Shown in pieces: positions 5,993-6,404 of a stretch of 12,954 bases of DNA. The notes under the pieces were generated by a model that was given only the letters and a program-made list of their open reading frames with translations, had not been told where the DNA came from and made no database searches. Where the stretch lies: positions 1 to 12,954 of the forward strand of contig NW_021826356.1 of NCBI RefSeq assembly GCF_006345805.1, read 5' to 3'. Position 1 is the first letter of the stretch; each line of letters begins with the position of its first letter. Origin of the DNA: Octopus sinensis. Its lineage: Eukaryota. The position numbers were made by a program, and so were the translations under genes.

Positions 5993-6404
5993 AGGACACA
6001 GAAAATGTGTCAAAGCCGACAGGAAGCGTTCGATGCTTCCTAGGGCTAAACAGCGGTGGTGTAATTCCCATACGGGACTGTCACGTTAAGTTGACATTAT
6101 ACAACCACATTACGGTAACCAGTGAATAGATTTCACTGTAAATATATATATTTGTGAAGGCTGGACAGGCACCTCAATCAGCAGATCTCACTATCCTGGG
6201 CTGATGACGGGTTAAGACCCAGAAACATGCATATCCTCAGGTGTGAATATTGGCTGGTAGGGGTGCTTGCCTCACCTTCACAAATATAAGGACACAGAAA
6301 ATGTGTCAAAGCTGACAGCAAGCGTTCGATGCTTCCTAGGGCTAAACAGCGGTGGTGTAATTCCCATACGGGACTGTCACGTTAAGTTGACAGTATACAA
6401 CCAC
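5993..6404 (+). mobile_element. Retrozyme-like / Penelope-derived element: 1.4 tandem copies of a 296-bp hammerhead-containing unit
   Basis: Direct repeats 5993-6108 and 6289-6404 (116 bp, 3 mismatches, period 296) enclose a 180-bp segment carrying the hammerhead motif. TA-rich flanks on both sides; no TG...CA LTR ends. Confidence 0.65.
6188..6246 (+). ncRNA. Type I hammerhead ribozyme motif (minimal, slightly degenerate)
   Basis: Stem I CCUGGG (6195-6200) pairs with CUCAGG (6236-6241), extended by UCAC (6188-6191)/GUGA (6243-6246). Core CUGAUGA at 6201-6207; stem II GGGU-UAAG-ACCC at 6209-6220; GAAAC at 6222-6226; palindromic AUGCAU at 6227-6232; NUH triplet AUC at 6233-6235, predicted cleavage after C6235. 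Deviations: C6208/A6221 at the base of stem II and a C6226.A6233 mismatch in stem III. Confidence 0.75.

What the first reader, a model, noticed from the sequence alone, without database searches (positions are those of the whole stretch)
6188..6246. Type I hammerhead ribozyme motif in probable cephalopod genomic DNA
Seen: every hammerhead element in type I order - stem I CCUGGG/CUCAGG plus a UCAC/GUGA extension across a UAU/U internal loop, CUGAUGA, stem II GGGU(UAAG)ACCC, GAAAC, a very short palindromic stem III insert AUGCAU, and an AUC cleavage triplet. Established: minimal type I hammerheads with short palindromic stem III occur in Penelope-like retroelements and metazoan non-LTR retrozymes, and can cleave as dimers. 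Inference: this copy descends from an active ribozyme. The C6226.A6233 mismatch (GUC expected) and the C6208/A6221 stem II base may weaken or inactivate it, so cleaner paralogues should exist elsewhere in the genome.
Basis: partly seen in the sequence, partly recalled or inferred. Interest (0 to 1): 0.85.

Follow-up and report, generated by a model that had tools for sequence, protein, structure and literature searches.

The report
Decayed hammerhead retrozyme copy in octopus DNA
The hammerhead ribozyme motif is really there, inside a 1.4-unit copy of a 296-bp non-coding repeat dropped into a TA microsatellite of octopus-like DNA, so it is most likely a slightly damaged relic of an already known kind of ribozyme-carrying mobile element and not a new system.

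Summary
The catalytic core is complete: CUGAUGA, GAAA, A15.1-U16.1 and C17. Helix I has 6 bp and helix II has 4 bp.

Motif statistics are significant for this window (about 1e-4 to 1.5e-3 expected) but not for a whole genome. Rfam's hammerhead models give no hit, even at E<=10. A covariance model built from four experimentally tested animal retrozyme hammerheads ranks this site first (16.3 bits, E~0.005).

- The motif caps a 142-nt hairpin.
- It lies in a 296-bp unit present as 1.39 tandem copies (5993-6404; the repeated 116 nt are 97% identical).
- The unit is 45% GC, non-coding and strongly self-paired as a circle (z=-7.4).
- TA-rich DNA flanks it, and its 3' end is AC-rich.

This matches metazoan non-LTR retrozymes mobilised by Penelope-like elements.

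The copy has one ribozyme and a weak helix III. A at 6233 is one transition from a perfect 10-nt palindrome. The locus is therefore probably inert.

No paralogues could be reached, so covariation is untested. Verdict: new member of a known kind, modest interest.

The parts
5993..6404 (+). Whole insertion: 1.39 tandem copies of a 296-bp non-coding unit (layout A-B-A'). The left edge is uncertain by about 6 nt because of TA-rich microhomology.
   Evidence: Direct repeat D2, spacing 296; self-BLAST; pairwise alignment.
5993..6108 (+). Repeat segment A, first copy (116 nt).
   Evidence: 97% identical to 6289-6404. The 3 differences are at 6017/6313 (CpG to TpG), 6024/6320 and 6100/6396.
6289..6404 (+). 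Repeat segment A, second copy. It ends in the AC-rich stretch UAUACAACCAC, directly against TA-rich DNA.
   Evidence: In the circular fold, 6403-6404 plus 6109-6113 pair with GUGGUGU 6352-6358.
6109..6288 (+). Segment B, the single-copy part of the unit. It holds a small hairpin (6120-6138) and the long hairpin that carries the ribozyme.
6147..6288 (+). Long imperfect hairpin. Its apical three-way junction is the hammerhead, so helix I is continued outward by about 35 more base pairs.
   Evidence: Inverted repeat I16. RNA fold of 6140-6295: -64.2 kcal/mol, z=-6.5, 0 of 200 shuffles as stable. This hairpin also explains the sub-threshold Rfam MIR6149 hit.
6188..6246 (+).
   Evidence: Best hit in the window of model R1 (6195-6241, 16.3 bits, E~0.005, full model length).
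6195..6200 (+). Helix I, 5' strand CCUGGG. It pairs with 6236-6241 CUCAGG (6 bp, one of them G-U).
6201..6207 (+). Core box CUGAUGA (C3-A9).
6208..6221 (+). Helix II GGGU/ACCC (4 bp, G10.1-C11.1) with loop 2 UAAG. [quoted passage not shown]
   Evidence: An unpaired base between A9 and 10.1 is described as conserved in Penelope-element hammerheads (PMC4209133).
6222..6225 (+). Core box GAAA (G12, A13, A14, A15.1).
6225..6234 (+). Helix III segment ACAUGCAUAU. It is one transition (A6233) away from the perfect 10-nt palindrome ACAUGCAUGU. As a monomer it can form only A15.1-U16.1 plus one A-U pair.
   Evidence: The coral retrozyme hammerhead has the perfect palindrome ACAGUACUGU in the same position.
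6235..6236 (+). Predicted cleavage site, between C17 (6235) and C1.1 (6236).
   Evidence: Position follows from standard hammerhead numbering. Cleavage was not tested.
5984..5992 (.). TA-rich left flank (ATATATATA): target DNA, possibly part of a target-site duplication.
6405..6440 (.). TA-rich right flank (TCTATATATATATAATTATATATAAAATAATATAT).

Best explanation
Positions 5993-6404 are a retrotransposed, non-autonomous 'non-LTR retrozyme'-type element in octopus-like DNA.

Proposed life cycle of the family (inferred from the published family, not shown here):
1. Tandem genomic copies are transcribed into a multimeric RNA.
2. The type I hammerhead cuts after C17. Because helix III is short and palindromic, it mainly does so as a double hammerhead between two copies.
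3. The 296-nt monomer is circularised by a host RNA ligase (RtcB in the published assays).
4. A Penelope-like element's endonuclease and reverse transcriptase nick AT-rich DNA and start cDNA synthesis inside an AC-rich stem of the RNA. They copy more than one turn of the circle, or an uncleaved multimer.

At this locus that process left 1.39 units in a (TA)n tract. The sequence runs unbroken across the cleavage site.

The copy carries only one hammerhead, and its helix III is weakened by A6233. It therefore cannot release a unit-length RNA and is probably inert, a dead-on-arrival 'monomer derivative'.

Shown here: the motif, the repeat structure, the flanks and the predicted folds. Inferred: transcription, cleavage, circularisation and the identity of the mobilising enzyme.
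For: 1. Complete hammerhead core in type I order, with helix I of 6 bp and helix II of 4 bp. This is the published architecture of canonical animal hammerheads.
2. Model R1 was built only from the coral, mussel and two axolotl retrozyme ribozymes that were assayed in vitro. It puts this site first in the window, aligned end to end (16.3 bits, E~0.005).
3. Same helix III design as the efficiently cleaving coral ribozyme: GAAAC, then a 6-nt palindrome, then RUH. The native sequence is one transition from a perfect 10-nt palindrome. With G at 6233 the double hammerhead is the minimum-energy dimer (-42.7 versus -31.4 kcal/mol for two monomers; helix III probability 0.99), as it is for the coral control.
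4. Unit of 296 bp present as 1.39 tandem copies. This is inside the 150-450 bp range of retrozyme repeats.
5. GC content is 45%, below the 50% ceiling given for the family. The window has no matching protein domain and no tRNA.
6. The virtual circular monomer is highly self-paired: -104.8 kcal/mol, z=-7.4, 66% of bases paired. Hammerhead helices I and II remain formed in that fold.
7. TA-rich DNA lies on both sides, and the 3' end of the insertion falls in an AC-rich strand of a stem. [quoted passage not shown] It also parallels the microsatellite bias of these elements.
8. The two A copies differ at 3 of 116 positions. About one substitution is therefore expected in the 59-nt ribozyme since insertion, which fits A6233 being a later mutation.
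9. Single-ribozyme 'monomer derivatives' scattered through genomes are described for this family.
Against: - No Rfam hammerhead family matches, even at E<=10 on 76 nt.
- Neither the motif statistics nor the R1 score is significant genome-wide.
- Only one hammerhead and one full unit are present, so the defining tandem arrangement with at least two ribozymes is not met at this locus.
- The extra A6221 before G12 has no precedent that I could document.
- C15.2.A16.2 breaks helix III. In the native sequence the double hammerhead is no better than two monomers (-30.3 versus -29.8 kcal/mol) and loses to another dimer (-37.0 kcal/mol).
- No paralogue, orthologue or octopus Penelope-like element could be retrieved. 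There is therefore no covariation evidence and no proof that this is a multi-copy family.
- No reverse transcriptase or GIY-YIG endonuclease reading frame is in the window.
Confidence: 0.75

Rival explanations
1. Chance resemblance. The 142-nt hairpin belongs to some unrelated repeat, such as a foldback or miniature inverted-repeat transposon (MITE) inserted at TA, or to a local partial duplication. Its apical loop merely happens to spell the hammerhead boxes.
For: - Rfam hammerhead models give nothing.
- The descriptor expectation of 1e-4 to 1.5e-3 per window implies tens to hundreds of chance motifs per Gb-scale genome.
- There are two irregular positions at helix bases, and helix III is weak.
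- The hairpin is bracketed by TA-rich sequence, as TA-targeting MITEs are.
- No second copy was found to show conservation.
Against: - For a given long hairpin with a 35-nt apical loop, my analytic estimate is about 1e-7. That is the chance that the loop starts with CUGANGA, ends with U then H, and holds a helix II of at least 4 bp followed by GAAA, using window base frequencies. It is an inference, not a tool result.
- A MITE does not explain the 116-nt direct repeats with a 296-bp period.
- It does not explain the near-perfect 10-nt palindrome exactly at helix III.
- It does not explain the canonical 6 bp / 4 bp helix geometry.
- It does not explain the end-to-end top hit with a model built from unrelated species.
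Confidence: 0.13
2. Fragment of an autonomous Penelope-like element. The A-B-A' structure would be the remnant of pseudo-LTRs whose reverse transcriptase/endonuclease reading frame has been deleted, not a dedicated non-autonomous retrozyme.
For: - Penelope-like elements carry hammerheads in their pseudo-LTRs, insert as partial tandems and prefer AT-rich or microsatellite targets.
- An unpaired base after A9 is typical of their ribozymes.
- Retrozymes and pseudo-LTRs are reported to be phylogenetic sisters.
Against: - There is no reverse transcriptase or GIY-YIG coding remnant anywhere in the 12.9-kb window.
- The two repeat copies are separated by only 180 bp, with a clean 296-bp period.
- The ribozyme has the canonical retrozyme geometry (helix I 6 bp, helix II 4 bp, helix III present). 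The min-HHR geometry described for metazoan Penelope-like elements differs: helix II 6-8 bp, helix I 2-5 bp and no helix III.
- The ribozyme sits in the single-copy part, not in the repeated part.
Confidence: 0.08
3. A host-exapted RNA: the hairpin is a microRNA-like precursor, or the ribozyme is a conserved regulatory hammerhead in a host transcript.
For: - Rfam gives a sub-threshold match of 6152-6285 to a plant microRNA precursor family (MIR6149, 30 bits against a gathering score of 100).
- The hairpin is very stable.
- A few conserved intronic hammerheads exist in amniotes (introduction of PMC7229834).
Against: - The Rfam match only reflects a long hairpin and is far below threshold.
- The locus sits among microsatellites and interspersed repeats, with no gene evidence.
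- The partial tandem structure points to a mobile element.
- Ribozyme-weakening mismatches argue against selection for cleavage.
Confidence: 0.03

Closest known systems
Metazoan non-LTR retrozymes (Cervera & de la Pena 2020, PMC7229834), for example Acropora millepora Rtz224 and Mytilus galloprovincialis Rtz353
   Same: - Type I hammerhead with helix I of 6 bp and helix II of 4 bp.
- GAAAC, then a palindromic insert, then RUH. Coral has ACAGUACUGU; this locus has ACAUGCAUAU.
- Unit length 296 bp, within the 170-400 nt range.
- GC below 50%.
- No LTR, primer-binding site, polypurine tract or reading frame.
- Strongly self-paired predicted circle in which the ribozyme fold is not masked.
- Insertion longer than one unit.
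   Different: - Only 1.39 units and a single ribozyme, instead of dimers to multimers.
- Unpaired C and A flank helix II.
- C15.2.A16.2 mismatch, with an AUC triplet instead of GUC or GUA.
- Loop sequences are different.
- Family copy number and expression are unknown.
Amphibian satellite 2 / axolotl retrozyme hammerheads (HHR_Amex1 and HHR_Amex2)
   Same: - Very weak helix III with a palindromic loop, so cleavage depends on dimers.
- HHR_Amex2 has a U.U mismatch at the base of helix II and still cleaves: 22% as a monomer and efficiently as a dimer.
- Repeats of about 330-350 bp.
- A 19/20-nt stretch of the unit resembles Ax330 (marginal).
   Different: - The axolotl palindromes are perfect (ACACGUGU and ACAUGU); here one pair is broken.
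- There are tens of thousands of tandem copies in axolotl, against a lone partial copy here.
Minimal hammerheads in pseudo-LTRs of Penelope-like elements (Cervera & de la Pena 2014, PMC4209133; Frangieh et al. 2024, PMC11167929)
   Same: - Unpaired nucleotide between A9 and G10.1, with a G10.1-C11.1 pair.
- Palindromic 15.2/16.2 region designed for dimers.
- AT-rich target.
- Insertion end in an AC-rich stem.
- Partial-tandem insertion.
   Different: - Those ribozymes have a long helix II (6-8 bp), a short helix I (2-5 bp) and usually no helix III.
- They flank a reverse transcriptase / GIY-YIG reading frame, which is absent here.
Rfam hammerhead families (type I model and the related clan members)
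   Same: Core boxes and type I connectivity, read by eye.
   Different: No match at gathering score, or at E<=10. I could not run a positive control to see how those models score published retrozyme ribozymes.

Membership tests
Hammerhead ribozyme, type I | Core box CUGANGA (C3-A9) | tested here: met
   CUGAUGA at 6201-6207.
Hammerhead ribozyme, type I | Core GAAA (G12-A15.1), an A15.1-U16.1 pair, and H17 before the cut | tested here: met
   GAAA at 6222-6225, U6234 and C6235. This fits the published centre GAAAY / RUH.
Hammerhead ribozyme, type I | Helices I and II flank the core, with the open end in helix I | tested here: met
   Helix I CCUGGG/CUCAGG (6 bp) plus UCAC/GUGA. Helix II GGGU/ACCC (4 bp). 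Both are in the centroid fold. An unpaired C6208 and A6221 flank helix II.
Hammerhead ribozyme, type I | Helix III with a paired 15.2-16.2 ('perfect helix topology'), or a perfect palindrome for dimer formation | tested here: not met
   C6226.A6233 is a mismatch. Intermolecular helix III has probability 0.02 in the native dimer ensemble, against 0.99 with G at 6233.
Hammerhead ribozyme, type I | Score at or above the curated threshold of an Rfam hammerhead covariance model | tested here: not met
   No hammerhead hit at gathering score or at E<=10 on 231 nt and 76 nt. A custom model from four assayed retrozyme ribozymes gives 16.3 bits, E~0.005, as the top hit.
Hammerhead ribozyme, type I | Loop 1 - loop 2 tertiary contacts | not testable with these tools
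   The geometry is canonical (6 bp to loop 1, 4 bp to loop 2), but the loop nucleotides could not be compared with a text-held consensus.
Hammerhead ribozyme, type I | Site-specific self-cleavage | not testable with these tools
   Needs a transcription/cleavage assay.
Metazoan non-LTR retrozyme | Type I hammerhead inside short head-to-tail repeats of about 150-450 bp, from dimers to multimers | tested here: inconclusive
   The period of 296 bp is in range, but only 1.39 units and one ribozyme are present. Such monomer derivatives are described for the family.
Metazoan non-LTR retrozyme | Low GC (<50%), non-coding, and no LTR, primer-binding site or polypurine tract | tested here: met
   GC is 44.9%. 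Only short reading frames lie in the unit and they have no homologues. The repeated part lacks TG...CA ends, and no primer-binding-like sequence was seen by reading.
Metazoan non-LTR retrozyme | Unit RNA predicted to be a highly self-paired circle | tested here: met
   Circular minimum free energy -104.8 kcal/mol, z=-7.4, 0 of 200 shuffles as stable.
Metazoan non-LTR retrozyme | Multi-copy family in the genome, with conserved ribozyme and compensatory changes | not testable with these tools
   No cephalopod genome is searchable here. Six DNA scans and one protein search found nothing.
Metazoan non-LTR retrozyme | Expression as linear and circular unit-length RNA | not testable with these tools
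   Needs RNA data.
Penelope-like element (autonomous) | Reverse transcriptase plus GIY-YIG endonuclease reading frame between pseudo-LTRs | tested here: not met
   No such reading frame or Pfam domain is in the window.
Penelope-like element (autonomous) | AT-rich or microsatellite target, and an insertion end in an AC-rich stem of the RNA | tested here: met
   (TA)n lies on both sides. The 3' end ...UAUACAACCAC lies in a predicted stem, compared. This bears on which enzyme mobilised the copy, not on membership.

The most novel reading that the evidence does not exclude
Octopuses may harbour an undescribed, still active retrozyme family whose hammerhead is a hybrid. It would have canonical 6/4-bp helices and a palindromic helix III, plus the Penelope-type unpaired base after A9 and an extra A before G12.

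The stem formed by GGGCUAAACAGCGGUGGUGU with the AC-rich insertion end would be a conserved reverse-transcription start signal. That 20-nt stretch matches an axolotl retrozyme at 19 of 20 aligned positions with one gap. The signal would be recognised by Penelope-like reverse transcriptases from molluscs to amphibians.
Probability: 0.12. Interest if true: 0.5.

Novelty: new member of a known kind. Interest (0 to 1): 0.3.

Why it matters
If the family is confirmed in the source genome, it would add cephalopods to the animals known to carry hammerhead retrozymes. No paper that mentions retrozymes surfaced in my search for cephalopod terms.

It would also give a cleanly bounded insertion whose ends fit the recently described Penelope-type mechanism: an AT-rich nick, and an internal start of reverse transcription in an AC-rich stem. 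That makes it a useful natural example for how circular ribozyme RNAs are copied back into DNA.

This particular copy is most likely an inert relic.

Tried and rejected
- Rfam at gathering score on the whole window, and at E<=10 on 231 nt and 76 nt. There was no hammerhead hit. The hits were a sub-threshold microRNA-like match to the hairpin and chance C/D-box matches to CUGAUGA.
- Paralogue hunts by exact-pattern scans of the metagenome, prokaryotic genome and viral collections, with the ribozyme (N at 6208 and 6221) and with a 22-mer from segment A. All gave 0 hits.
- Protein-database search with the concatenated reading frames of the unit, hoping that gene callers had translated paralogous copies. 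No hit.
- Search with other window reading frames. One hit, to the C-terminal tail of an Octopus bimaculoides protein. Its gene is not on record for contig retrieval, so no octopus DNA could be fetched.
- Similarity of the unit, outside the ribozyme, to the four published retrozymes. Only a 20-nt match to axolotl Ax330 stood out. One of 500 shuffles reached it, across 8 comparisons, so it is marginal and not used as evidence.
- Transfer-RNA origin of the neighbouring SINE-like repeat. ARAGORN and Rfam found nothing.
- A polymerase III B box in the unit. No match within one mismatch.
- The idea of a miniature LTR element (TRIM, terminal-repeat retrotransposon in miniature). The repeats lack TG...CA ends and no primer-binding site is visible.
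- The MITE idea does not explain the 296-bp period.

Full report

Yes. Reading the + strand gives, in order:
- UCAC (6188-6191)
- UAU (6192-6194)
- CCUGGG (6195-6200)
- CUGAUGA (6201-6207)
- C (6208)
- GGGU (6209-6212)
- UAAG (6213-6216)
- ACCC (6217-6220)
- A (6221)
- GAAA (6222-6225)
- C (6226)
- AUGCAU (6227-6232)
- A (6233)
- U (6234)
- C (6235)
- CUCAGG (6236-6241)
- U (6242)
- GUGA (6243-6246)

All invariant hammerhead core positions are present in type I order: C3-A9, G12-A14, A15.1-U16.1 and H17. Helix I has 6 bp and is extended by UCAC/GUGA across a UAU/U internal loop. Helix II has 4 bp with G10.1-C11.1.

- An unpaired C6208 and A6221 flank helix II. They can equally be read as a C.A mismatch at its base.
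- C6226 (15.2) faces A6233 (16.2).

**2. Is it more than chance?**

- A descriptor of my own finds only this site on both strands of the window.
- In 20,000 simulated windows of the same first-order composition, the loose descriptor gives 1.5e-3 hits per window. A descriptor as strict as the observed motif gives 1e-4.
- That is significant for one window. It is not significant for a genome scan of about 2e5 windows.
- Rfam's curated hammerhead models do not match at gathering score. They also do not match at E<=10 when only 231 nt or 76 nt are searched.
- I could not feed published retrozyme ribozymes to Rfam as a positive control. Instead I built a covariance model (R1) from the four animal retrozyme hammerheads whose constructs are printed in Supplementary Table 2 of PMC7229834: coral Amil224, mussel Mg353, and axolotl Ax353 and Ax330.
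- With filters off, R1's best hit in the window is 6195-6241 on the + strand. It is aligned over the whole model, with 16.3 bits and E~0.005. The next hit has E 0.18.
- This is again window-significant and not genome-significant.

**3.

- *Hairpin.* The motif sits at the tip of a 142-nt hairpin (6147-6288). Helix I simply continues outward. The fold of 6140-6295 has z=-6.5, and its centroid keeps helices I and II. This hairpin explains a sub-threshold Rfam microRNA-like hit.
- *Direct repeat.* A 116-nt segment A (5993-6108) recurs at 6289-6404 with 97% identity and a spacing of 296 bp. The locus is therefore A-B-A', which is 1.39 head-to-tail copies of a 296-bp unit carrying one ribozyme in B.
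- *Composition and fold.* The unit is 45% GC in a 36% GC window. As a virtual circle starting at the cleavage site it folds to -104.8 kcal/mol (z=-7.4, 66% of bases paired), with the hammerhead helices intact.
- *Flanks.* TA-rich DNA lies on both sides (5984-5992 and 6405-6440). The 3' end of the insertion is the AC-rich ...UAUACAACCAC. In the circular fold this forms the 3' strand of a stem with GUGGUGU 6352-6358.
- *No coding signal.* No reading frame in the window matches any protein family, and no tRNA is found.

**4. What it most likely is**

These features coincide with the published definition of metazoan non-LTR retrozymes:
- canonical type I hammerheads inside 150-450 bp tandem repeats;
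- GC below 50%;
- no LTR, primer-binding site or polypurine tract;
- expression as highly self-paired 170-400 nt linear and circular RNAs (PMC7229834).

The canonical animal hammerhead is described as having helix I of 6 bp, helix II of 4 bp and a 1-2 bp helix III capped by a small palindromic loop that lets two copies act as a dimer (PMC4209133).

The coral ribozyme cleaves efficiently. It reads GAAAC-AGUACU-GUC, so its helix III segment ACAGUACUGU is a perfect 10-nt palindrome. The octopus-like copy reads GAAAC-AUGCAU-AUC, giving ACAUGCAUAU, which is one transition from perfect.

In silico, the coral dimer's minimum-energy structure is the double hammerhead (-43.8 versus -35.0 kcal/mol for two monomers). 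For the native sequence here:
- the double hammerhead is -30.3 kcal/mol;
- two monomers are -29.8 kcal/mol;
- an alternative dimer is -37.0 kcal/mol;
- helix III has probability 0.02.

With G at 6233 the double hammerhead becomes the minimum (-42.7 versus -31.4 kcal/mol) and helix III has probability 0.99.

The two A copies differ at 3 of 116 positions, one of them a CpG to TpG change. About one substitution is therefore expected in the 59-nt ribozyme since insertion. That is consistent with A6233 being a post-insertion mutation (inference).

The C after A9 is a conserved trait of Penelope-element hammerheads. Axolotl HHR_Amex2 tolerates a U.U mismatch at the base of helix II. The extra A6221 remains unexplained.

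**5. How it probably got there (inferred)**

- The sequence is continuous across the cleavage site (6235|6236) and is longer than one unit. The template was therefore a ligated circle or an uncleaved multimer, not a cleaved linear monomer.
- These elements favour microsatellites such as (TA)n (PMC8557442).
- Retrozymes are reported to be non-autonomous relatives of their pseudo-LTRs, with scattered single-ribozyme 'monomer derivatives' (bioRxiv 10.64898/2026.07.22.740005).
- The junctions here fit that picture: an AC-rich 3' end against (TA)n, and TA microhomology at the 5' end.
- With a single, weakened ribozyme, this locus cannot release a unit-length RNA and is probably inert.

**6. Rivals**

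- *Pure chance in an unrelated foldback or MITE.* This is the main alternative. The Rfam miss and the lack of reachable paralogues favour it. Against it are the 296-bp period, the palindrome placed exactly at helix III, the canonical helix lengths, and my rough estimate of about 1e-7 that the 35-nt apical loop of a given hairpin would carry all the boxes (analytic inference).
- *A remnant of an autonomous Penelope-like element.* This is unlikely because no coding remnant exists and the ribozyme geometry is the retrozyme type.
- *A host microRNA or regulatory ribozyme.* There is no support beyond hairpin stability.

**7. Origin of the DNA**

The reading frame at 1153-1440 is 69% identical over 71 residues to the C-terminal tail of an Octopus bimaculoides UniRef protein. 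That tail is probably a repeat-derived exon. An interspersed SINE-like repeat occurs twice in the window.

**8. What could not be done**

- No cephalopod genome is searchable with these tools.
- Six DNA pattern scans and a protein search with the unit's reading frames found nothing.
- Family size, covariation, tandem arrays, expression and cleavage are all open.

**9. Verdict**

The site is best filed as a decayed single-ribozyme copy of a non-LTR retrozyme-type element.
- This is a new member of a known kind, in a group of animals for which I found no explicit report.
- Interest is modest.

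Noticed in passing
window 5794-5990 and 1828-2249: An interspersed SINE-like repeat lies immediately upstream of the retrozyme-like insertion, also next to (TA)n. A second copy at 1828-2249 (90% identity over the first 73 nt) carries internal microsatellites. From memory it resembles the tRNA-derived octopus SINEs, but ARAGORN and Rfam find no tRNA similarity.
   Followed up: partly
window 1153-1440 (+): A 95-aa reading frame is 69% identical over 71 residues to the C-terminal tail of an Octopus bimaculoides protein annotated as MFS-domain containing. 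The match lies outside the transporter domains, so it is probably a repeat-derived exon in that gene model. It is the only tool-based evidence for octopus origin.
   Followed up: partly
window 6447-6564: A separate foldback with 52-nt arms (87% complementary, 14-nt spacer) lies 40 nt downstream of the insertion, in TA-rich DNA. It is not similar to the 296-bp unit. It may be a MITE.
   Followed up: no
window 6070-6089 and 6366-6385: GGGCTAAACAGCGGTGGTGT matches GGGCTAAAAACGGTGGTGT of the axolotl Ax330 retrozyme. One of 500 shuffles scored as well, across 8 comparisons. Its GUGGUGU part pairs with the AC-rich insertion end in the predicted circle. This could be a conserved reverse-transcription start stem or a coincidence.
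   Followed up: partly
window 4249-4722, 8883-9420, 7742-8281 and 12661-12772: The window is dense in microsatellites: long (TA)n tracts, about 180 copies of an ATG-type triplet, and a 15-nt minisatellite (TTCGTCCCACATCAC, 7.5 copies).
   Followed up: no
window 6837-6878 and 6906-6947: A 42-nt direct repeat with 93% identity and 69-nt spacing. Unexplained.
   Followed up: no
window 7843-7903 (+): Second-best hit of the custom hammerhead model (11 bits, E 0.18). It shares only CUGAUGA and weak helix I pairing and lies inside the triplet-repeat region. It is regarded as chance.
   Followed up: no
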